Part shown: positions 14,437 to 64,000 of the stretch, one piece after another
How positions within the stretch are numbered: the first letter of the stretch is position 1
Layout: each line of letters starts with the position of its first letter
From: Ranitomeya imitator
Lineage: Eukaryota
Reading direction: 5' to 3'
DNA: 64,000 nt
NCBI RefSeq assembly: GCF_032444005.1
Contig: NC_091287.1
Coordinates: 25,172,001 to 25,236,000 of the forward strand
Made by a program: the position numbers and the translations under genes
Notes under the pieces: generated by a model
Seen by the model: the letters and a program-made list of their open reading frames with translations, nothing else
Told to the model about the DNA's origin: nothing
The model's database searches: none

Positions 14437-15233
14437 TGTTATGAATAGGTAATTCAGAACCACAATGGACCTTGAAGTTCAGAGCACACAAAGTGACCTG
14501 ACAATAACCAAACGTGGGAACTCTGCTGACCGCAATCCCTAATCCTATCACACCACACTAGAGGTAGCCGTGGATTGCGCCTAACGCTCCCTATGCAACT
14601 CGGCACAGCCTGAGAAACTAGCTAGACCTGAAGAGAGAAAAATAAGCCTACCTTGCCTCAGAGAAATTCCCCAAAGGAAAAGGCAGCCCCCCACATATAA
14701 TGACTGTGAGTTAAGATGAAAATACAAACACAGAGATGAAATAGATTTAGCAAAGTGAGGCCCGACTTACTGAATAGACCGAGGATAGGAAAGATAGCTT
14801 TGCGGTCAACACAAAAACCTACAAACAACCACGCAGAGGGGCAAAAAGACCCTCCGCACCGACTAACGGTACGGAGGTGCTCCCTCTGCGTCTCAGAGCT
14901 TCCAGCAAGCAAAAAAAACCAATATAGCAAGCTGGACAGAAAATAAAGCAAACAAAAGTAACACAAGCAGAACTTAGCTTATGCTGAGCAGACAGGCCAC
15001 AGGAACGATCCAGGAGGAAGCAAGAACAATACTAGAACATTGACTGGAGGCCAGGATCAAAGCACTAGGTGGAGTTAAATAGAGCAGCACCTAACGACTT
15101 AACCTCATTACCTGAGGAAGGAAACTCAGAAGCCGCAGTACCACTCACATCCACCAACGGAAGCCCATAGACAGAATAAGCCGAAGTACCACTTGTGACC
15201 ACAGGAGGGAGCTCGACCACAGAATTCACAACA
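14437..15233 (-). mobile_element. Solo LTR of the chromovirus family at 49929-54718 (divergent subfamily)
   Basis: Reverse complement aligns along the 49929 LTR; TG...CA termini; 5-bp TSD CCCAT. Confidence 0.95.
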
Positions 15234-48959: not shown

Positions 48960-49895
<936 letters not shown>

Positions 49896-49928
49896 TCTTT
49901 CCCACCTCTTGTCTATTCCTTGCTTATC

Positions 49929-50739
49929 TGTTGTGAATTCTGTGGCAGAGCTCCCTCCTGTGGTCACAAGTGGTACTTCGGCTGATTCTCTCTGTGAGCT
50001 TCTGTTGGTGGAGGAAAGTGGTACTGCGGCTACTGAGTTTCCTTCCTCAGGTGATGTGGTGAAGTCGTTAGGTGCTGCTCTATTTAACTCCACCTAGTGC
50101 TTTGATCCTGGCCTCCAGTCAATGTTCTAGTATTGGACCTGTTTCCTCCTGGATCGTTCCTGTGGCCTGCTGCTCTGCATAGCTAAGTTCTGCTTTGCTA
50201 TTTTGTTTGCTGTTTTTTCTGTCCAGCTTGTCTATTTGTTTTTTCCTGCTTGCTGGAAGCTCTGGGACGCAGAGGGTGTACCTCCGTGCCGTTAGTTCGG
50301 TACGGAGGGTCTTTTTGCCCCCTTTGCGTGGTTTTTGTAGGGTTTTGTGTTGACCGCAAAGTTACCTTTCCTATCCTCGCTCTGTTCAGAAAGTCGGGCC
50401 TCACTTTGCTAAATCTATTTCATCTCTATGTTTGTCTTTTCATCTTTACTCACAGTCATTGTGTGTGGGGGCTGCCTTTTCCTTTGGGGTATTTCTCTGA
50501 GGCAAGGTAGGCTTATTTTCTATCTTCAGGCTAGCTAGTTTCTCAGGCTGTGCCGAGTTGCATAGGGAGCGTTAGGCGCAATCCACGGCTGCCTCTAGTG
50601 TGTTGGAGAGGATTAGGGATTGCGGTCAGCAGAGTTCCCACGTCTCAGAGCTCGTTCTATGTTTTTGGGTTATTGTCAGGTCACTGTATGTGCTCTGACC
50701 TCTATGTCCATTGTGGTACTGAATTATCTTATCACAACA
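49929..50739 (+). repeat. 5' LTR (811 bp)
   Basis: tgttgtga...tcacaaca; TATA-like TATTTAA at 50081. Confidence 0.97.
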
Positions 50740-50741
50740 GT

Positions 50742-50752
50742 ACTGGAGGCCA
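50742..50752 (+). promoter_or_regulatory. Self-priming primer-binding site
   Basis: ACTGGAGGCCA is the exact reverse complement of TGGCCTCCAGT (50109-50119), 28 nt downstream of the TATA-like box. Confidence 0.85.
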
Positions 50753-50875
50753 AAAGTACTAATGATTCTCAATAGAGGGAAAAAAGAAGTTCTGACACCA
50801 TTTTTTTTTCTCTGCACTGTGTTTTGCCTTTTTTTTCCCCTAGACATTTGGGTGGTTCAGGACACAGGTGTAGCG

Positions 50876-52753
50876 ATGGACATTAAAGGTCTGTCTTCAT
50901 GTGTGGATCAGCTCACGGCAAGAGTACAAAATATTCAAGACTTTGTGGTTCAGAATTCTATGTTAGAACCGAGAATTCCTATTCCTGATTTGTTTTTTGG
51001 AGATAGAACTAAATTTCTGAGTTTCAAAAATAATTGTAAACTATTTCTGGCTTTGAAACCTCGCTCCTCTGGTGACCCAGTTCAACAAGTTAGGATCATT
51101 ATTTCTTTTTTACGTGGCGACCCTCAGGACTGGGCATTTTCTCTTGCGTCAGGAGATCCTGCATTAAGTAATATCGATGCGTGTTTCCTGGCGCTCGGAT
51201 TGCTGTACGATGAACCTAATTCAGTGGATCAGGCAGACAAAAATTTGCTGGCTCTGTGTCAGGGTCAGGATGAGATAGAGGTATATTGTCAGAAATTTAG
51301 AAAGTGGTCCGTAATGACTCAATGGAATGAAGGTGCGCTTGCAGCTATTTTCAGAAAAGGTCTCTCTGAAGCCCTTAAGGATGTCAAGGTGGGATTTCCT
51401 ATGCCTGCTGGTCTGAATGAGTCTATGTCTTTGGCCATTCAGATCGGTCGACGCTTGCGTGAGCGTAAATCATTGCACCATTTGGCGGTATTACCTGAGC
51501 TTAAACCTGAGCCTATGCAGTGCGATAGGACTTTGACCAGAGTTGAACGGCAAGAACACAGACGTCTGAATGGGCTGTGTTTCTACTGTGGTGATTCCAC
51601 TCATGCTATCTCTGATTGTCCTAAGCGCACTAAGCGGTTCGCTAGGTCTGCCACCATTGGTACGGTACAGTCAAAATTTCTTCTGTCCGTTACCTTGATC
51701 TGCTCTTTGTCATCATATTCTGTCATGGCATTTGTGGATTCAGGCGCTGCCCTGAATTTGATGGACTTGGAGTATGCTAGGCGTTGTGGGTTTTTCTTGG
51801 AGCCCTTACAGTGTCCTATTCCATTGAGAGGAGTTGATGCTACGCCTTTGGCCAAGAATAAGCCTCAGTACTGGACCCAGCTGACCATGTGCATGGCTCC
51901 TGCACATCAGGAGGTTATTCGCTTTCTGGTGTTGCATAATCTGCATGATGTGGTCATGTTGGGGTTGCCATGGCTACAAGTCCATAATCCAGTATTAGAT
52001 TGGAAATCCATGTCTGTGTCCAGCTGGGGTTGTCAGGGGGTACATGGTGATGTCCCATTTCTGACTATTTCGTCATCCACCCCTTCTGAGGTTCCAGAGT
52101 TCTTGTCTGATTACCGGGATGTATTTGATGAGCCCAAGTCCGATACCCTACCTCCGCATAGGGATTGTGCTATCGATTTGATTCCTGGTAGTAAATTCCC
52201 AAAAGGTCGACTGTTTAATTTATCTGTGCCTGAGCACGCCGCTATGCGGAGTTATGTGAAGGAGTCCTTGGAGAAGGGGCATATTCGCCCGTCATCGTCG
52301 CCATTAGGAGCAGGGTTCTTTTTTGTAGCCAAGAAGGATGGTTCACTGAGACCTTGTATAGATTACCGCCTTCTAAATAAGATCACGGTTAAATTTCAGT
52401 ACCCCTTGCCGTTGTTATCGGATTTGTTTGCTCGGATTAAGGGGGCTAGTTGGTTCACCAAGATAGATCTTCGTGGTGCGTATAATCTTGGGCGTATTAA
52501 GCGAGGCGATGAATGGAAAACTGCATTTAACACGCCCGAGGGCCATTTTGAGTATCTAGTAATGCCATTCGGACTTGCCAATGCTCCATCAGTGTTTCAG
52601 TCCTTTATGCATGACATCTTCCGAGAGTACCTGGATAAATTCCTGATTGTGTACTTGGATGACATTTTGATCTTCTCGGATGATTGGGAGTCTCATGTGA
52701 AGCAGGTCAGAACGGTGTTTCAGGTCCTGCGTGCTAATTCTTTGTTTGTGTAG
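50876..52753 (+). pseudogene. Gag-protease-RT polyprotein (single frame), premature TAG in RT
   Basis: Gag; CCHC knuckle CFYCGDSTHAISDC; protease FVDSGA; RT YLDD; TAG at 52751-52753, frame resumes in ORF 52793. Confidence 0.93.
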
Positions 52754-53398
52754 GGATCAAAGTGTCTCTTTGGTGTTCAGAAGGTTTCATTTTTGGGGTT
52801 CATCTTTTCCCCTTCTACTATCGAGATGGACCCTGTTAAGGTCCAAGCCATCCATGATTGGACTCAGCCGATATCTCTGAAAAGTCTGCAAAAGTTCCTG
52901 GGCTTTGCTAATTTTTATCGTCGCTTCATCTGCAATTTTTCTAGTATTGCTAAACCATTGACCGATTTGACCAAGAAGGGTGCTGATGTGGTCAATTGGT
53001 CTTCTGCTGCTGTGGAAGCTTTTCAAGAGTTGAAGCGTCGTTTTTCTTCTGCCCCTGTGTTGTGTCAACCAGATGTTTCGCTTCCGTTCCAGGTCGAGGT
53101 TGATGCTTCTGAGATTGGAGCAGGGGCTGTTTTGTCGCAGAGAAGTTCTGATTGCTCGGTGATGAAACCATGCGCCTTCTTCTCCAGGAAGTTTTCGCCT
53201 GCTGAGCGAAATTATGATGTTGGCAATCGAGAGTTGCTGGCCATGAAGTGGGCATTCGAGGAGTGGCGTCATTGGCTTGAAGGAGCTAAGCATCGCGTGG
53301 TGGTCTTGACTGATCATAAGAACTTGACTTATCTCGAGTCTGCCAAGCGGTTGAATCCTAGACAGGCTCGTTGGTCGCTGTTTTTTGCCCGTTTTGAC
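52754..53398 (+). pseudogene. RT thumb/RNase H
   Basis: [44 protein letters not shown]. Confidence 0.93.
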
Positions 53399-53910
53399 CT
53401 TGTCCCAGGAGAAGGCTCAACGTTTCGCTAATCGCAGACGCTGTGTGGGTCCCCGACTTCGTGTTGGGGATTTGGTTTGGTTATCTTCTCGTCATATTCC
53501 TATGAAGGTTTCCTCTCCTAAGTTTAAACCTCGTTTCATTGGTCCGTATAGGATTTCTGAGGTTCTTAATCCTGTGTCTTTTCGTCTGACCCTTCCAGAT
53601 TCTTTTTCCATACATAACGTATTCCATAGGTCATTGTTGCGGAGATACGTGGCACCTATGGTTCCATCTGTTGATCCTCCTGCCCCGGTTTTGGTGGAGG
53701 GGGAGTTGGAGTATATTGTGGAGAAGATTTTGGATTCTCGTGTTTCAAGACGGAAACTCCAGTATCTGGTTAAGTGGAAGGGTTATGCTCAGGAAGATAA
53801 TTCCTGGGTCTTTGCCTCTGATGTCCATGCTCCCGATCTTGTTCGTGCCTTTCATATGGCTCATCCTGGTCGTCCTGGGGGCTCTGGTGAGGGTTCGGTG
53901 ACCCCTCCTC
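53399..53910 (+). pseudogene. Integrase C-terminus (GPY/F) and chromodomain
   Basis: KFKPRFIGPY; EYIVEKILDSR...QYLVKWKGY...NSW. Confidence 0.92.
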
Positions 53911-53926
53911 AAGGGGGGGGGGGTAC
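53911..53926 (+). promoter_or_regulatory. Polypurine tract
   Basis: AAGGGGGGGGGGG-TAC immediately before the 3' LTR. Confidence 0.9.
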
Positions 53927-54718
53927 TGTTGTGAATTCTGTGGCAGAGCTCCCTCCTGTGGTCACAAGTGGTACTTCGGCTGATTCTCTCTGTGAGCTTC
54001 CGTTGGTGGAGGAAAGTGGTACTGCGGCTTCTGAGTTTCCTTCCTCAGGTGATGTGGTGAAGTCGTTAGGTGCTGCTCTATTTAACTCCACCTAGTGCTT
54101 TGATCCTGGCCTCCAGTCAATGTTCTAGTATTGGACCTGTTTCCTCCTGGATCGTCCCTGTAGCCTGCTGCTCTGCATAGCTAAGTTCTGCTTTGCTATT
54201 TTGTTCGCTGTTTTTTCTGTCCAGCTTGTCTATTTGTTTTTTCCTGCTTGCTGGAAGCTCTGGGACGCAGAGGGTGTACCTCCGTGCCGTTAGTTCGGTA
54301 CGGAGGGTCTTTTTGATAGGGTTTTGTGTTGACCGCAAAGTTACCTTTCCTATCCTCGCTCTGTTCAGAAAGTCGGGCCTCACTTTGCTAAATCTATTTC
54401 ATCTCTACGTTTGTCTTTTCATCTTAACTCACAGTCATTATATGTGGGGGCTGCCTTTTCCTTTGGGGTATTTCTCTGAGGCAAGGTAGGCTTATTTTCT
54501 ATCTTCAGGCTAGCTAGTTTCTCAGGCTGTGCCGAGTTGCATAGGGAGCGTTAGGCGCAATCCACGGCTGCCTCTAGTGTGTTGGAGAGGATTAGGGATT
54601 GCGGTCAGCAGAGTTCCCACGTCTCAGAGCTCGTTCTATGTTTTTGGGTTATTGTCAGGTCACTGTATGTGCTCTGACCTCTATGTCCATTGTGGTACTG
54701 AATTATCTTATCACAACA
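53927..54718 (+). repeat. 3' LTR (792 bp)
   Basis: About 10 substitutions and one 19-bp deletion relative to the 5' LTR (manual comparison). Confidence 0.97.
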
Positions 54719-55299
54719 CTTATCTTCCTGGATTTTAAAGCCATTGTGGGTATACCTCACTCTTTCCTCAGGACCTGTGAGTTTTATTATTTTTTCATGT
54801 TATGTATTTATTTTGTCCCCCAAAATTTTACATGTAGATATAATGGTGATAGAAAATAATAATCATCAATTAGGATGACTTATGCTGTTTTATGGGAGTG
54901 CAGTGCAAACAAAAGGCTGCTATAAATGGCTTGTTTGAATTCTAGCGTTAATCCCTATGGCACCTTACACCTACAGGAATTTTAGATATTGACTTGACAC
55001 ATCCAAAATATATGTATTTAGCACTATGTCTTCACCGTAGCTTTTCAGATGTATTTGGTATCAATTATGAATCCCTTCTAGACCCCCAGGAGTAAATCAG
55101 AAATGCTGTTCTATAGAAAAACAATATAAACTGGGGTGTTTTGGTGCTTCCGTTGTGAGCAGCAAGACAGTTGGAACTCCCCATCCTGCAATTACCCCTG
55201 TTAGTGCTTGGTACCATCCCACCAATGGCCCCATAGTAGGTGCATGGTCTTCTTGTAGGCACAACACTGCCAGAAGTATAGTCCCATTTTAGATCCTGA

Positions 55300-56986: not shown

Positions 56987-59065
56987 CACTGGATACAGAA
57001 AGTATTCAGACCACTTTCAATTTTTCCTCCATGAGATGGTTCTACTCCTTCATTGGAGTCCAGGTGTGTAATTAAACTGATAGGACTTGATTTGGAGCGG
57101 CGCACACCTGTCTATATAAGACCTCACAGCTCACAGTGCATGTCAGACCAAATGAGAATCATGAGGTCAAAGGAACTGGCCAAATGAGCTCAGAGACAGA
57201 ATTGTGGCAAGGCACAGATCTGGCCAACCAAGGTTACAACAGAATTTCTGCAGTACTCAAGGTTCCTAAGAGCACAGTGGCCTCCATAATCCTTAAATGA
57301 AAGAAGTTTGGGACCAGCAGAAGTCTTCCTAGACCTGGCCGTCCAGCCAAACTGAGCAATCGTGGGAGAAGAGCCTTGGTGAGAGGTGAAGAAGATCCCC
57401 AAGATCACTGTGGCTGAGCTCCAGAGATGCAGTAGGGAGATGGGAGAAAGTTCCACAAAGTCAACTGCAGCCCTCCACCAGTCGGGCCTTTATGGCAGAG
57501 TGGCCCAACGGAAGCCTCTCCTCAGTGCAAGACATATGAAAGTTTACTAAAAAACACATGAAGGACTCCCAGACTATGAGAAATACGATTCTCTGGTCTG
57601 ATGAGACGAAGATAGACCTTTTTGGTGATAATTCTAAGCGCATGTGTGGAGAAAACCAGGCACTGCTCATCACCTGCCCAATACAATCCCAACAGTGAAA
57701 CATGGTGGTGGCAGCATCATGTTAAGGGGGTATTTTTCAGCTGCAGGGACAGAACGACTGGTTGCCATTGAACAAAACATGAATGCGGCCAAGTACAGAG
57801 ATCTCCTGGATGAAAACCTCTTCCAGAGTGCTCTGGACCTCAGACTTGGCCGAAGGTTCACCTTCCAACAAGACAATGACCCTAAGCACACAGCTAAAAT
57901 AACAAAGGAGTGGCTTCAGAACAACTCTGTGGCCATTCTTGACCGGCCCAGCCAGAGCCCTGACCTAAACCCAATGGAGCATCTCTGGAGAGACCTGAAA
58001 ATGGCGTCCACCAATGTTCACCATCCAATCTGACGGAACTGGAGAGGATCTGCAAGGAAGAATGGCCGAGGATCCCCAAATCCAGGGGTGAAAAACTTGT
58101 TGCATCATTCCCAAGAAGACTCATGGCTGTACTATCTCAAAAGGGGCTTCTACTCAATACTGAGCAAAGGGACTGAATACTTATGACCATGTGATATGAC
58201 CAATTGTCACGGATCCCTTCTCTGTGGTGTCACTTATTCGTCACGTGCCTGCTCTCACACGTGAATTGGGGTTGTGCCTGCAAGGGTTAATCTATCTCCC
58301 CACTCTCAGTCCCGCATTCAACCTCTGTCCTATGCTGTAATGGGAGCATAAATCACACACCGACCCAGGCCAGACACCTGCTCATACTTGCTGCCACCAC
58401 TCATTGAATACACGGGCGATGAGTCCCGGACTAATAATAATACTAATAAAAATATGTCTATCACTCATAAGCCTCACACACCTTTAGGCTATGGATTCTT
58501 TAGAACATTCAAGGTTCAACTTGTTAAAGTTTTATACTTTAATTGCAAAAAGTTCAATGCTTACAATAAGAAAAAGGTATACAAATATGATAATAAAAAG
58601 ACATACAACTTATGCAAAACAGTGTCAAAATAAACAGGAGAAAACTTACAGAAAATCATCTAACTGGTAGTTGCTTCTGCTCCCTGGGGTAGGACGAATG
58701 TAGATTGGAACACATCAGCTTCTCAGGCTCTCCCCTCTGTACCAGTCTGTCACTGTAAACTTGTTTACTGTAAACGATATCTATAACTCTGTATGTAACC
58801 CCTTTCTCATGTACAGCACCATGGAATTAATGGTGCTATATAAATAAATAAATAATAATAATAACAATAATAAAAATAATAATATTTCAGTTTTTATTTT
58901 TTAATAAATTTGCAAAAATTTTTACATTTCTGCTTTTTTCAGTCAAGATGGGGTGCAGAGTGTACATTTATGAAAAAAAATTAACTTTTTTGAATTTACC
59001 AAATGGCTGCAATGAAACAAATAGTGAAAAATTTAAAGGGGTCTGAATGCTTTCCTTAACCACTG
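56987..59065 (+). mobile_element. Tc1 transposon (Sleeping Beauty-like), degraded, interrupted at 58198-58881
   Basis: TA|cactggatacagaaagtattcagacc ... ggtctgaatgctttccttaaccactg|TA; ATG 57161 MRSKEL; [27 protein letters not shown]. Confidence 0.9.
58198..58881. mobile_element. Composite insert: LTR-like 5' part + L2 3' tail
   Basis: tgtcacgg at 58205; L2 tail ~58728-58881 with AGCACCAT-GGAATTA-ATGGTGCT stem-loop and (AAT)n; ATAT on both sides. Confidence 0.65.
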
Positions 59066-60516
59066 TAGGTCCATGCCACAGCTTCCTATGCTGAGCGCAG
59101 CAGTTAAAGATCAGTTTGTCATCAGCTGCTGATCTCTGCATACGCAGCGACCAACGTATGAAAGCTTTCAGCATGATAAATTGAGCTTTGTCATCTCAAT
59201 CGCTGCCTATACAGAGTGCAGCAGACAATGACCATCTGGGCCTGACCGCTGCGCTCTGCATAGGCAGTAACTGAGATGACAACGGCTGCACTACACTCTC
59301 CCATAGCTCCTTTTTTTTCTCTTACGTGTAATTTTATGAGAAAGGAGACATGTTGAGGGAGCTATCCCAATTTTTTTTTTTTTTTTAAAGTGTCCCATGT
59401 AAAAAAAAAACAAAAAATCCACTAATTGATATGAACTATAACTTTTTAAATGAGCTTTCTAACTAGGATTTGGGCTAAGGTCAAGGATAGGACTAGGCTT
59501 TGAACTTAGGTAAAGGTTACTACTAGGTGGTTTAGTGGAGGTGATAACTTTGGGGTAGGTTCAGGACTAAGGAAATAACACAGATACATAAAAAACGCAA
59601 AAATCAAAATAAATAAATAAATAAATAAAAAGTAAAAAAAAAAATAAGGATGTAATTTTTTTTTTTTTTTTAGTTTTTATGTGTAACGGGTGTAATATAC
59701 TCGTATTGCCCAGGGTGCTGCCGTCACACGTTGCTCCATTGCTGGTAACATACGATCACAGTAGTGCCACCATTGCAGCTTTTTATACCTACGCCACCTC
59801 CTCCATCCTTTGAACAAGCGTGTACGGATAAGGTTAAGTTTTTGTAAACAGCGCTCCGGCATTCACTTTCCTTGTTGATTGAAAATGTATCCGTACAGCA
59901 AGGAAAACTCATCTTTGAATTGAATAGATGCTATCTGCTTGTGCCGAACAATGAGAAACAGATAAATCACTTCCCAGAACTGCATGTGAGGGATAATGTC
60001 AATATGAGTTATGTCTTCCTATAACTTCAAATGAAGTCTGCTGCTGACTGTCACAAGATGAACAATTTCCATTACTCCATCAGCGTTCCACAGCTTGTTC
60101 ACTTAGAAAACTGCTATATGTTTCTTCTCTGCTGTCACTAACACAGATAAGTCACACACTGACTGTCAGAGGAGAACATCAGGAAATCTCAAAGAAAGAC
60201 CGTTCTCTGTGTCTTGTTGTATACCGCTATAATACCGCAGCCATGAATTAACATTAATATCAAAGTAACGTCACAGGAACGTACAAATTGTAATCATTGT
60301 CCCATCAAGACTCAACGCAACACAGAAGGTCGAAATATTTCCCTGTGCTCATTGTCGCTCCCTTGAGAATAAAATCCTCAGTTTGGTTCATGTTTTGGAT
60401 TGCATAAAACAGACACAGTGAGTGAAAGATCTGCACTAAAGAGTCATAAACTATTATTTTATTATAATATTATAATGCTGTCACCTACTGAACTTCAGTC
60501 CTACATGTAAAAGATA

Positions 60517-61710
60517 ATGCTCCTATGTACAGGAATATAACTACTATAATACTGCTCCTATGTACAAGAATATAACTACTATAATACTGCTCCTATGTAC
60601 AAGAATATAACTACTATAATACTGCCCCTATGTACAAGAATATAACTACTATAATACTGCCCCTATGTACAAGAATATAACTACTATAATACTGCTCCTA
60701 TGTACAAGATTATAACTACTATAATACTGCTCCTATGTACAAGAATATAACTACTATAATACTGCTCCTATATACAAGAATATAACTACTATAATACTGC
60801 TCCTATGTACAAGAATATAGCTACTATAATACTGCTCCTATGTATAAGAATATAACTACTATAATACTGCTCCTATATATAAGAATATAACTACTATAAT
60901 ACTGCTCCTATGTACAAGAATATAACTACTATAATACTGCTCCTACGTACAAGAATATAACTACTATAATACTGCCCCTATGTACATGTACAAGAATATA
61001 ACTACTATAATACTGCTCCTATGTACAAGAATATAACTACTATAATACTGCCCCTACGTACAAGAATATAACTACTATAATACTGCCCCTATGTACAAGA
61101 ATATAACTACTGTAATACTGCTCCTTTGTACAAGAATATAACAACTATAATACTGCCCCTATGTACAAGAATATAACTACTATAATACTGCCCCTATGTA
61201 CAAGAATATAACTACTATAATACTGCTCCTATGTACAAGATTATAACTACTATAATACTGCTCCTATGTACAAGAATATAACTACTATAATACTGCTCCT
61301 ATATACAAGAATATAACTACTATAATACTGCTCCTATGTACAAGAATATAGCTACTATAATACTGCTCCTATGTATAAGAATATAACTACTATAATACTG
61401 CTCCTATATATAAGAATATAACTACTATAATACTGCTCCTATGTACAAGAATATAACTACTATAATACTGCTCCTACGTACAAGAATATAACTACTATAA
61501 TACTGCCCCTATGTACATGTACAAGAATATAACTACTATAATACTGCTCCTATGTACAAGAATATAACTACTATAATACTGCCCCTACGTACAAGAATAT
61601 AACTACTATAATACTGCCCCTATGTACAAGAATATAACTACTGTAATACTGCTCCTTTGTACAAGAATATAACAACTATAATACTGCCCCTATGTACAAG
61701 ATTATAACTT
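60517..61710. repeat. 35-bp minisatellite (same family and orientation as 41040-42290)
   Basis: Same unit. Confidence 0.96.
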
Positions 61711-62067: not shown

Positions 62068-64000
62068 CTAGATGGTGGCCCGATTCTAACGCATCGGGTA
62101 TTCTAGAATATGTATGTAGTTTATTTATGAAGTTTTCAGAATAATGCAGTTTATACACAGGATTCGGCTGGCCGTGACTAATTAGCGAAGCGTGGTTCAA
62201 ATTCCGCACCAATTCGCGGGGAGAGTGCGACTGTCGCTGATTGTTCGCAGCCCGGGCAAAAGACTCTCAGTGGGCCCCCCTCTTTAACACATACCACGAT
62301 TCATGATGCACAGATACAGCATAGAAATATAGCACAGGCAAGTAGCGTATAACACAGCCCACGTAGTATATAACACAGCCACGTAGTATATAGCACATCC
62401 CATGTAGTATATAACAGCCACATAGTATATTGCCCAGCCACGTAGTATTTAGCACAGCCCACGTAGTAAATAGCACAGCCCACGTAGTATATTGCCCAGC
62501 CATGTAGTATATAGCACAGCCCACGTAGTATACAACACAGCCACGCAGTATATTGCCCAGCCACATAGTATATAGCACAGCCCATGTAGTATATAGCACA
62601 GCCACGTAGTATATAACACAGCCCATGTAGTATATAGCACAGCCACGTAGTATATAGCACAGCCATGTAGTATATAGCACAGCCATGAAGTATATAGCAC
62701 AGCCCACATAGTATATAGCTTAGCCCACGTAGTATATAGCACAGGCCACATAGTAAATAGCACAGACACGTAGTATGTTGCCCAGCAACGTAGTATATTG
62801 CCCAGCCATGTAGTATATTGCCCAGCCATGTAGTAAATAGCACAGTCACATAGTATATAGCACAGTCACGAAGTATTTTTACACAACCCACATAGTAAAT
62901 AGCACAGCCCATGTAGTATATTGCCCAGCCACGTAGTATATAGCACAGTCACGCAGTATATAGCACAGCCTCGTAGTATATAACACAGCCCATGTAGTAT
63001 ATAGCACAGCCACATATTATATAGCACAGCCACGTAGTATATAGCACAGCCCATGTAGTATATAGCACAGCCCACGTAATATATAGCACAGGCCACATAG
63101 TAAATAGCACAGACACGTAGTATATAGCACAGCCACATAGTATATAACACAGCCAATGTAGTATATAGAACAGCCACATAGTATATAGCACAGTTACATA
63201 GTATATAGCACAGCCACATAGTATATAGCACAGCCCATGTAGTATATAGCACAGCCCACGTAATATATAGCACAGGCCACGTAGTAAATAGCAGACACGT
63301 AGTATATTGCCCAGCCATGTAGTATTTTGCCCAGCGATGTAGTATATTGCCTAGCGACGTAGTATATTGCCCAGCCACATAGTATATTCCCCAGCCACAT
63401 AGTATATAGCACAGCCCACATACTATATAGCACAGCCACGTAGTATATAACACAGCCCATGTAGTATATAGCACAGCCACATAGTATATAGCACAGCCTA
63501 TGTAGTATATAGCACAGCCCACGTAGTATATAGCACAGGCCATGTAATAAATAGCACAGACACGTAGTATATTGCCCAACCACATAGTATTTTGCCCAGC
63601 GACATAGTATATTGCCCAGCGACGTAGTATATTGCCCAGCCATGTGGTATATTGCCCAGTCACATAATATATAGCACAGCCACGTAGTATATAGCACAGC
63701 CATGTAGTATATAACACAGCCCATGTAGTATATAGCACAGCCACGTAGTATATAGGACAGCCACGTAGTATATAGCACAGCCCACGTAGTGTATAGAACA
63801 ACCCACATAGTATATAGCACAGGCCACGTAGTAAATAGCACAGACACGTAGTATATTGCCCAGCCATGTAGTTTATTGCCCAGCGACGTAGTATATTGGT
63901 GAGCGACGTAGTTTATTGCCAGCCACGTAGTATATTGCCCAGCCACGTAGTATATTGCCCAGCCATGTAGTATATTGCTCAGCCACGTAGTATATTTCAC
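62068..64000 (-). mobile_element. Second Helitron (3' end), carrying a minisatellite; runs off window
   Basis: Near-identical 3' terminus (hairpin + CTAG at 62068-62071). Confidence 0.72.
62325..64000. repeat. 20-21-bp minisatellite
   Basis: Units (C)CACGTAGTATATAGCACAGC and variant CACGTAGTATATTGCCCAGC. Confidence 0.95.

What the first reader, a model, noticed from the sequence alone, without database searches (positions are those of the whole stretch)
50507..50843. Putative leader intron that would excise the self-priming PBS: spliced mRNA versus unspliced genomic RNA switch
Seen: donor-like AAG|GTAGGC at 50506/50507 in U5, also present in the 3' LTR and the divergent solo LTR at 14437. 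A branch-like CTGAC lies at 50792, followed by a ~45-nt AG-free polypyrimidine tract ending CCCCTAG at 50843, 33 nt upstream of the gag ATG (50876). Established: in Tf1-type self-priming the first 11 nt of the RNA pair with the PBS and are cut off to serve as primer. Inference: splicing out this 337-nt intron removes the PBS and U5 end. That would give an mRNA that cannot self-prime or lose its capped 5' end, and would reserve the unspliced RNA for reverse transcription. I do not know of this being described for vertebrate chromoviruses, but I cannot search the literature.
Basis: partly seen in the sequence, partly recalled or inferred. Interest (0 to 1): 0.75.

Follow-up and report, generated by a model that had tools for sequence, protein, structure and literature searches.

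The report
Possible leader intron in frog retrotransposon
A poison-frog gypsy-type retrotransposon that primes its own reverse transcription carries conserved, intron-like splice signals between its promoter and its gag gene that would cut out the priming site, but no spliced RNA was seen, so the intron remains a reasonable, untested idea.

Summary
The host element is a Ranitomeya Tf1/sushi-type chromovirus with an internal deletion. Its self-priming is well supported: an 11-nt 5' end/PBS pairing that covaries in four variants.

By a rough weight matrix, AAG|GTAGGC (50506/7) is the best donor and CCCCTAG| (50843) the best acceptor in the 766-nt leader.

Across 23 LTR copies and 10 leader copies, both sites are kept or replaced nearby:
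- One clade lost the donor GT. Its L005/L018 branch gained a consensus GAG|GTAAGT 5 nt upstream (chance about 0.001).
- Subfamily B lost the acceptor AG but has CATCAG|G 7 nt downstream.
- The genome's gene models start an exon at this AG in 15 of 19 cases, but these models look frame-chained and not RNA-proven.

Against the intron:
- Four public runs (Logan contigs, RNA only guessed) show no 50506-50844 joint, and unspliced contigs cross both sites.
- One equally young lineage (L019) has no good donor.
- Two divergent self-priming families lack either the donor or the acceptor.
- The invariant CCCC pairs with an upstream GGG tract, which suggests an RNA stem.

Verdict: observation confirmed, interpretation plausible (about 0.4) but unproven. 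The scan had already found the self-priming on other DNA of this genome, but not the intron.

The parts
49929..50739 (+). 5' LTR (TGTTGTGA...TCACAACA), flanked by target-site duplication CTTATC at 49923-49928 and 54719-54724
   Evidence: 98.7% identical to the 3' LTR over aligned bases, plus a 19-nt indel
50082..50088 (+). TATA-like box TATTTAA, about 27 nt before the predicted RNA start
   Evidence: conserved in most copies
50109..50119 (+). Predicted first 11 nt of the RNA (self-primer TGGCCTCCAGT)
   Evidence: Complementary to 50742-50752. Four covarying variants occur in other copies, plus further 9-nt pairings in L004 and Pristimantis L021
50281..50308 (+). Stable conserved hairpin (11-bp stem) followed by TCTTTTT. 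It contains the weak GT (TCG|GTACGG, intron start 50300) that some gene models use as a donor
   Evidence: z-scores -4.6 to -7.2 in four copies, stem kept through wobble and compensatory changes
50504..50512 (+). Putative 5' splice site AAG|GTAGGC (exon 1 would end at 50506)
   Evidence: Best donor of the leader. Kept in 18 of 23 LTR copies; consensus GAG|GTAAGT 5 nt upstream in L005/L018 after loss of the GT
50507..50843 (+). Putative 337-nt leader intron (end of LTR, PBS, purine tract, pyrimidine tract)
   Evidence: Motifs only; no spliced junction
50742..50752 (+). Self-priming PBS ACTGGAGGCCA
50762..50764 (+). Conserved upstream ATG in weak context, 114 nt before and in frame with the gag ATG
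   Evidence: the ATG is in all 10 copies, the 114-nt spacing in 7 of 10, and the frame is open in 6 of 10
50777..50787 (+). Purine tract GGGAAAAAAGA, 5' arm of a possible leader stem
   Evidence: pairs with 50829-50839 in 99% of cells, with one AU-to-GC compensatory pair in 4 copies
50792..50796 (+). Branch-point-like CTGAC
   Evidence: CTGAC in only 4 of 10 copies, CTGAG in most others
50800..50843 (+). Pyrimidine tract ending CCCCTAG; putative 3' splice site (AG 50842-50843). 50829-50839 is also the 3' arm of the possible stem
   Evidence: Best acceptor of the leader. Kept in 8 of 10 copies and shifted 7 nt downstream in L002/L007. Exon boundary of 15 of 19 gene models, with 2 more at the shifted AG
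50876..52753 (+). gag-protease-RT reading frame (ATG in strong context GCGATGG)
   Evidence: Retrotrans_gag, RVT_1
52793..53431 (+). RNase H part of pol, in another frame
53385..54095 (+). Integrase C-terminal SH3 plus chromodomain, reading into the 3' LTR. The integrase core is deleted, so this copy is not autonomous
53911..53923 (+). Polypurine tract AAGGGGGGGGGGG, 3 nt before the 3' LTR
53927..54718 (+). 3' LTR (carries the same donor 9-mer)
14437..15233 (-). Solo LTR of a sister subfamily (88.6% identical), donor 9-mer intact

Best explanation
The stretch is the 5' leader of a Tf1/sushi-type, self-priming chromovirus of a Ranitomeya poison frog. RNA most likely starts at about 50109. The leader carries a selectively maintained U2-type 5' splice site about 400 nt into the RNA (50506/7) and a strong 3' splice site 33 nt before the gag ATG (50843/4). 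Part of the transcripts would therefore be spliced into a gag-pol mRNA that lacks the U5 end, the PBS and four upstream ATGs. The unspliced RNA would keep the PBS and serve as the template for self-primed reverse transcription. What is shown: the motifs, their rank among leader sites, their conservation and turnover, and the self-priming pairing. What is inferred: that the spliceosome uses the pair, and that the two RNAs have different fates. Any splicing is probably facultative and minor in the tissues sampled.
For: (1) The donor and acceptor are the top-scoring sites of the leader in the window and sit at the same aligned places in 9 of 10 other copies. An acceptor this strong occurs only 8 times in 64 kb. 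(2) Donor turnover: the clade L019+(L005,L018), supported 100/100 in the LTR tree, lost the GT (AAGTCAGGC). Its L005/L018 branch has GAG|GTAAGT 5 nt upstream. A donor of that score is expected 0.0008 times per 21 nt. (3) Acceptor turnover: L002 and L007 read CCCCTTT in place of CCCCTAG but have CATCAG|G 7 nt downstream. (4) A 70%-diverged sister family (L004) keeps a T-run followed by CCCCTCAG upstream of gag. (5) 15 of 19 MAKER gene models of R. imitator that include the gag start begin an exon exactly at this AG, 2 more use the shifted AG, and one (P0017) uses the 50506/7 donor. (6) The intron would remove upstream ATGs at 50659, 50688, 50704 and 50762.
Against: No 50506-50844 joint appears in four runs from four studies, and contigs cross the donor (X10 record 9) and the acceptor (X2 record 18; X10 records 10 and 11) unspliced. 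Depth in 50733-50866 is no lower than in gag. These are Logan contigs whose RNA nature is only guessed, and contigs drop rare forms. L019 has no good donor at this place yet has LTRs as similar (98.9%) as the others. L004 has only a weak donor, and the Pristimantis relative has no AG between PBS and ATG. The gene models look frame-chained and not transcript-proven: P0003 has an 'intron' inside gag, and donor choice follows reading frame. CCCC is invariant although C and T are equivalent in a pyrimidine tract, and it pairs with GGG upstream.
Confidence: 0.42

Rival explanations
1. There is no intron. The conserved blocks are cis-acting elements of the unspliced genomic RNA. The purine tract (50777-50787) pairs with the T/C tract (50829-50839) to form a leader stem used for packaging, dimerisation, the self-priming fold or translation control. 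The pyrimidine tract might also act as a Yn-Xm-AUG-type ribosome entry aid. On this view the splice-like letters are a by-product.
For: The 11-bp helix is paired in 99% of cells across 9 copies, is specific to its register, and has one AU-to-GC compensatory pair in 4 copies. CCCC and GGG are invariant in all copies, and the same pairing can be drawn in the 70%-diverged L004. The whole PBS-to-ATG leader is conserved, not only the splice letters. No junction was seen.
Against: The minimum-free-energy fold of the leader is no better than shuffled sequence (z -0.10) and pairs the purine tract with the other T-run. The single compensatory pair is probably one event. This reading does not explain why a lost donor was replaced by a perfect U1 match 5 nt away, nor the new AG in subfamily B.
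Confidence: 0.33
2. The sites work as splice sites but not as a pair that serves the element. The strong acceptor (and at times the donor) is used when copies lie inside host introns or read-through transcripts, giving chimeric host-element RNAs. In that case the 5' donor may act mainly as a U1-binding site.
For: Many annotated models join host exons to this AG (P0018, P0019, P0038, P0041, P0057, P0130, P0003). P0017 joins the 50506/7 donor to an acceptor inside gag.
Against: Exonisation in host genes gives no selective reason for the element lineage to restore lost sites. The models may be ab initio artefacts.
Confidence: 0.13
3. Chance: a T-rich leader naturally holds acceptor-like tracts and a moderate GT, and conservation among copies only reflects recent common descent.
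For: A donor of this score occurs about 0.5 times per kb. The LTR holds several other acceptor-like sites scoring 7-9. Copies differ by only 10-20%.
Against: Both sites rank top in the leader, the acceptor is rare (8 per 64 kb), and both show replacement after loss.
Confidence: 0.12

Closest known systems
Tf1/Tf2 of fission yeast and vertebrate Tf1/sushi elements (self-priming); Tf2 alternative start sites (Persson et al. 2016, PMC5341516)
   Same: The same priming logic: the first 11 nt of the RNA pair with the PBS. In Tf2 the cell makes a second RNA that cannot be reverse transcribed, so two RNA species of one element have different fates.
   Different: In Tf2 the dead-end RNA arises from a downstream start site that omits the primer. 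Here it would arise by splicing that omits the PBS. No splicing is described for Tf1/Tf2 or sushi elements in the papers searched.
Retroviruses whose major splice donor lies upstream of the PBS (foamy viruses, with mSD in R; also HTLV/BLV from my own knowledge)
   Same: The donor lies in the LTR-derived leader before the PBS, so every spliced mRNA lacks the PBS (the figure legend of PMC7828637 lists mSD and PBS on the genome map; the position in R is from memory).
   Different: There the donor serves downstream genes (pol, env, accessory) and Gag comes from unspliced RNA. Here the only downstream gene is gag-pol itself.
Spliced short-gag mRNAs of copia-type elements (Arabidopsis EVADE, barley BARE1, Drosophila copia) and the Ogre intron
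   Same: LTR retrotransposons that use splicing to make a separately translated mRNA. The EVADE short-gag RNA is preferentially on polysomes (review PMC12786077).
   Different: Those introns lie in the coding region and change the protein made. This one would lie in the 5' leader and leave gag-pol intact.
Spliced L1 5' UTR copies (SpIREs; PMC5860796) and the Cer1 spliced CERV mRNA (PMC10309623)
   Same: Functional splice sites inside retroelement leaders or bodies.
   Different: L1 leader splicing is harmful to the element. Cer1 splicing encodes an extra protein. Neither touches a primer site.

Membership tests
U2-type GT-AG spliceosomal intron | 5' splice site matching MAG|GTRAGT | tested here: met
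   AAG|GTAGGC matches 7 of 9 positions and is the best of 65 GTs in the leader. A GAG|GTAAGT variant occurs in L005/L018.
U2-type GT-AG spliceosomal intron | Pyrimidine tract followed by YAG, with no AG just upstream | tested here: met
   50797-50841 is AG-free and 86% pyrimidine over 50800-50841, followed by TAG|A. It is the best of 47 AGs in the leader.
U2-type GT-AG spliceosomal intron | Branch point yUnAy 18-50 nt upstream of the AG | tested here: inconclusive
   CTGAC lies 48 nt upstream in the window but is CTGAG in most copies. Vertebrate branch sites are degenerate.
U2-type GT-AG spliceosomal intron | Exon-exon junction present in RNA | tested here: not met
   No 50506-50844 joint in X1, X2, X4 or X10. 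Unspliced contigs cross both sites. This is a weak test, because it uses contigs and the RNA status is only guessed.
U2-type GT-AG spliceosomal intron | Sites maintained in evolution | tested here: met
   Donor kept in 18 of 23 LTR copies plus shifted in 3. Acceptor kept in 8 of 10 plus shifted in 2. L019 is the exception.
Tf1/sushi self-priming chromovirus | PBS complementary to the first about 11 nt of the element's own RNA, with no tRNA match needed | tested here: met
   50109-50119 against 50742-50752. Four covarying variants occur in the family, plus two more in L004 and the Pristimantis element.
Tf1/sushi self-priming chromovirus | Ty3/gypsy gag-pol with a chromodomain integrase | tested here: met
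   Retrotrans_gag, RVT_1, RT_RNaseH, SH3_Tf2-1 and Chromo all match. The integrase core is deleted in this copy.
Tf1/sushi self-priming chromovirus | RNase H cut after nt 11 releases the primer | not testable with these tools
   This needs biochemistry.
Short-gag splicing (EVADE/BARE1/copia type) | Intron inside the coding region that truncates the polyprotein after gag | tested here: not met
   The candidate intron ends 33 nt before the gag ATG.

The most novel reading that the evidence does not exclude
Splicing sets the fate of a self-priming retrotransposon's RNA. The spliced form lacks the PBS and four upstream ATGs and is the efficient Gag-Pol messenger. The unspliced form keeps the PBS, is the template for reverse transcription, and can also start at the conserved in-frame ATG 50762 to give a Gag with a 38-residue hydrophobic N-terminal extension. 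A strong acceptor just upstream of gag would also explain how sushi-type gag genes are so easily captured behind host exons, which is the layout of PEG10/RTL-type domesticated genes (non-coding first exon, then a single coding exon).
Probability: 0.2. Interest if true: 0.7.

Novelty: new variant of a known kind. Interest (0 to 1): 0.5.

Why it matters
If real, this would be the first leader intron described for a vertebrate chromovirus, as far as the papers searched show. It would also be a new way for a retroelement without env to separate the RNA it translates from the RNA it copies, by removing the self-priming site. Vertebrate cells export and translate spliced RNA better than unspliced RNA, so this bears on how gag-pol-only elements get expressed. 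It also bears on why sushi-type gag genes have been recruited so often as host genes. If it is not real, the conserved purine/pyrimidine module is still an uncharacterised leader element of a young, abundant frog retrotransposon family.

Tried and rejected
(1) Read laying on 49929-53926 with four runs gave no junction. The contigs are only 100-300 nt long because the family is repeated. A contig that starts exactly at 50844 (X4 record 26) is not evidence, because a spliced and an unspliced form share the AG, so the assembly graph would branch at 50842 and not at 50844.

(2) I looked for transcript contigs through proteins. A gag-only search found no Logan contigs of this family. The one Logan family found (P0126, 46% identical) gave ten collinear contigs with no isoform difference.

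(3) The MAKER gene models were at first read as RNA evidence, because the preprint states est2genome=1. I downgraded them. They chain frames, put an intron inside gag (P0003), re-use LTR mini-exons, and choose a donor buried in a hairpin.

(4) I considered an N-terminal Gag extension from ATG 50762. The spacing is kept in 7 of 10 copies, but the frame is broken in 4, the amino-acid divergence is about neutral, and the start context is weak. It is recorded only in passing.

(5) Rfam gave no match in 49900-51000.

(6) RNAalifold on the leader gave no covariation for its own consensus structure.

(7) MaxEntScan and SpliceAI were not available.

(8) Under the operators' rule, no search was made with the joined exon 1 plus exon 2 sequence or its translation. 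The exons were handled separately and by reference only.

Full report
**What is there.**
The window holds an LTR retrotransposon.
- The 5' LTR is 49929-50739 and the 3' LTR is 53927-54718, with ends TGTTGTGA...TCACAACA.
- It has a target-site duplication CTTATC and a polypurine tract AAGGGGGGGGGGG.
- The LTRs are 98.7% identical over aligned bases.
- The inner part is only 3.2 kb. It holds gag-PR-RT (50876-52753), RNase H (52793-53431), and an integrase C-terminal SH3 plus chromodomain that reads into the 3' LTR. The integrase core is missing, so this copy is not autonomous.
- Protein hits are 90-97% identical to many 'unnamed protein products' of Ranitomeya imitator. The genome is therefore a Ranitomeya poison frog.

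**The premise: self-priming.**
- TATTTAA lies at 50082.
- About 27 nt later, TGGCCTCCAGT (50109-50119) is the exact complement of ACTGGAGGCCA (50742-50752), which begins 2 nt after the LTR end.
- In other copies both partners change together: GCTTCCTGT with ACAGGAAGC, GCCAGCTGT with ACAGCTGGC, and GCTCCTTGT with ACAAGGAGC.
- A 70%-diverged sister family (L004) and a Pristimantis relative have their own matching pairs.
- This agrees with earlier notes of this scan on the same genome and with the Tf1/sushi literature.

**The observation.**
- AAG|GTAGGC scores 4.4, against 0.7 for the next GT in the 766-nt leader.
- CCCCTAG| scores 10.3, against 7.8 for the next AG.
- Donors this good occur about 0.5 times per kb. 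Acceptors this good occur 8 times in 64 kb.
- So the acceptor is unusual, the donor alone is not, and the pair in the right order is moderately unlikely by chance.
- Whether the donor lies in U5 or in R is open, because I found no AATAAA-type signal in the LTR.

**Comparison of copies.**
From the R. imitator assembly I fetched ten loci through annotated proteins. I then aligned 23 LTR copies and 10 leaders.

Donor:
- The donor 9-mer is identical in 18 LTR copies.
- An old solo LTR has lost it.
- The clade L019+(L005,L018), supported 100/100 in an LTR tree, reads AAGTCAGGC, so the GT is gone.
- Within that clade, L005 and L018 are two separate insertions. Both have GAG|GTAAGT, a full U1 match, 5 nt upstream.
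- A donor of that score is expected 0.0008 times per 21 nt, although the ancestral GAGGCAAG was only one change away.
- L019 has no good donor at this place, and its LTRs are as similar to each other as those of the other elements. The donor is therefore not indispensable for transposition.

Acceptor:
- CCCCTAG|A is kept in 8 of 10 leaders.
- L002 and L007 read CCCCTTT there but have CATCAG|G 7 nt downstream.
- L004 has a 44-nt T-run followed by CCCCTCAG, 85 nt before its ATG, but only weak donors.
- The Pristimantis element has just 35 nt between PBS and ATG, with no AG.
- The module is therefore specific to the Ranitomeya families.

**Gene models.**
The R. imitator annotation was made with MAKER using transcript evidence (est2genome=1).
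- Nineteen models include the gag start. Of these, 15 begin an exon exactly at this AG, and 2 begin at the shifted AG of subfamily B.
- One model (P0017) ends an exon exactly at the 50506/7 donor and joins an acceptor inside gag.
- Other models use a weak GT (TCG|GTACGG, intron start 50300). That GT lies in the 3' arm of a very stable hairpin.
- The models chain reading frames across host exons, LTR mini-exons and element ORFs, and one places an intron inside gag.
- I therefore read them as showing that a trained splice model also picks these sites, not as RNA proof.

**RNA data.**
One search and one lay were allowed.
- The holders are Logan contigs of 33-145 million letters from four studies. 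By size and by study pattern they look like RNA-seq, but the tool only guesses this.
- No joint 50506-50844 appears in X1, X2, X4 or X10.
- Contigs run unspliced across the donor (X10 record 9) and across the acceptor (X2 record 18; X10 records 10 and 11).
- Depth in 50733-50866 is not lower than in gag.
- Contigs of a repeated family are short and drop rare paths, and most element reads in somatic tissue probably come from host introns. This counts against abundant splicing there but does not exclude a minor or germline isoform.

**A competing signal.**
- The purine tract GGGAAAAAAGA (50777-50787) can pair with TTTTTTTTCCC (50829-50839).
- On nine copies, 99% of cells pair, the register is specific, and one pair changes from AU to GC in four copies.
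- CCCC and GGG never vary, even in L004. A pyrimidine tract alone would not require that.
- However, the free-energy fold of the leader is no better than shuffled sequence and prefers another register.
- The stem and the acceptor are not exclusive: a stem could mask the acceptor.

**Mechanism and odds.**
My best reading, at about 0.42, is a facultative leader intron. U1 binds at 50506/7 and the strong 3' site at 50843 is used in part of the transcripts. The product is a gag-pol mRNA without the PBS and without the upstream ATGs at 50659, 50688, 50704 and 50762. The unspliced RNA is the self-priming template.

| Reading | Odds |
|---|---|
| Facultative leader intron | 0.42 |
| Purely structural or translational leader element | 0.33 |
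| Splice sites used only in host-element chimeras | 0.13 |
| Chance | 0.12 |

I rate the whole model, with the extensions listed under the novel case, at about 0.2.

**Comparison with what is known.**
- Making a second RNA that cannot be reverse transcribed is known for the self-priming Tf2 element, through a downstream start site (PMC5341516).
- Donors upstream of the PBS are known in foamy viruses (PMC7828637, with the position in R from memory).
- Spliced, preferentially translated gag mRNAs are known for EVADE, BARE1 and copia (PMC12786077).
- Leader splicing of L1 is known as a defect (PMC5860796).
- A leader intron that removes a self-priming PBS was not found in the papers searched.
- If true, it is a new variant of a known kind.

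Noticed in passing
window 50281-50316: Very stable 11-bp hairpin followed by TCTTTTT, about 170 nt into the predicted RNA. It is conserved, with wobble and compensatory changes, in four subfamilies (z -4.6 to -7.2). The LTR has no AATAAA-type signal, so this might mark 3' end formation or an R-region structure. The 3' LTR has a 19-nt deletion just after it.
   Followed up: partly
window 50762-50875: A conserved upstream ATG in weak context lies exactly 114 nt before the gag ATG in 7 of 10 copies, with paired -1/+1 indels in two of those. The frame is open in 6 of 10. It would add a 38-residue extension with a basic start and a Phe/Leu-rich core, which could be a by-product of T-rich DNA.
   Followed up: partly
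window 50777-50787 with 50829-50839: Possible leader stem between a purine tract and the distal pyrimidine tract: 99% paired in 9 copies, with one AU-to-GC compensatory pair.
   Followed up: yes
window 50500-50512; L004 11456-11475; L021 8385-8402: The motif GGCAAG followed within 0-4 nt by AG|GT recurs in the LTR part upstream of the PBS in three self-priming families that are otherwise 44-70% alike. This could be a shared U5 element or a shared donor.
   Followed up: no
L021 7744-23278 (Pristimantis euphronides): Three self-priming chromovirus units lie in a head-to-tail array that shares LTRs (period 4947 nt, 99.4-99.6% identical).
   Followed up: no
window 50658-50758: One contig of run X4 (depth 499) skips 99 nt (ends AT..GT) and so removes the LTR end and the PBS. 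This is most likely a deletion variant copy and not a splice.
   Followed up: no
window 60374-61700 and 62357-63965: Long tandem arrays with 35-nt (sometimes 41-nt) and about 20-nt periods lie downstream of the element.
   Followed up: no
window 57644-58033 and 49758-49985: Tc1/mariner-type transposase remnants (the ...HLWRDL... motif) flank the element. The retrotransposon is inserted in or next to one.
   Followed up: no
R. imitator assembly GCA_958301615.1, loci L001-L007 and L018-L020: Dozens of annotated proteins are chimeras of host domains with this element's gag-pol. These models should be treated as annotation artefacts until RNA supports them.
   Followed up: partly
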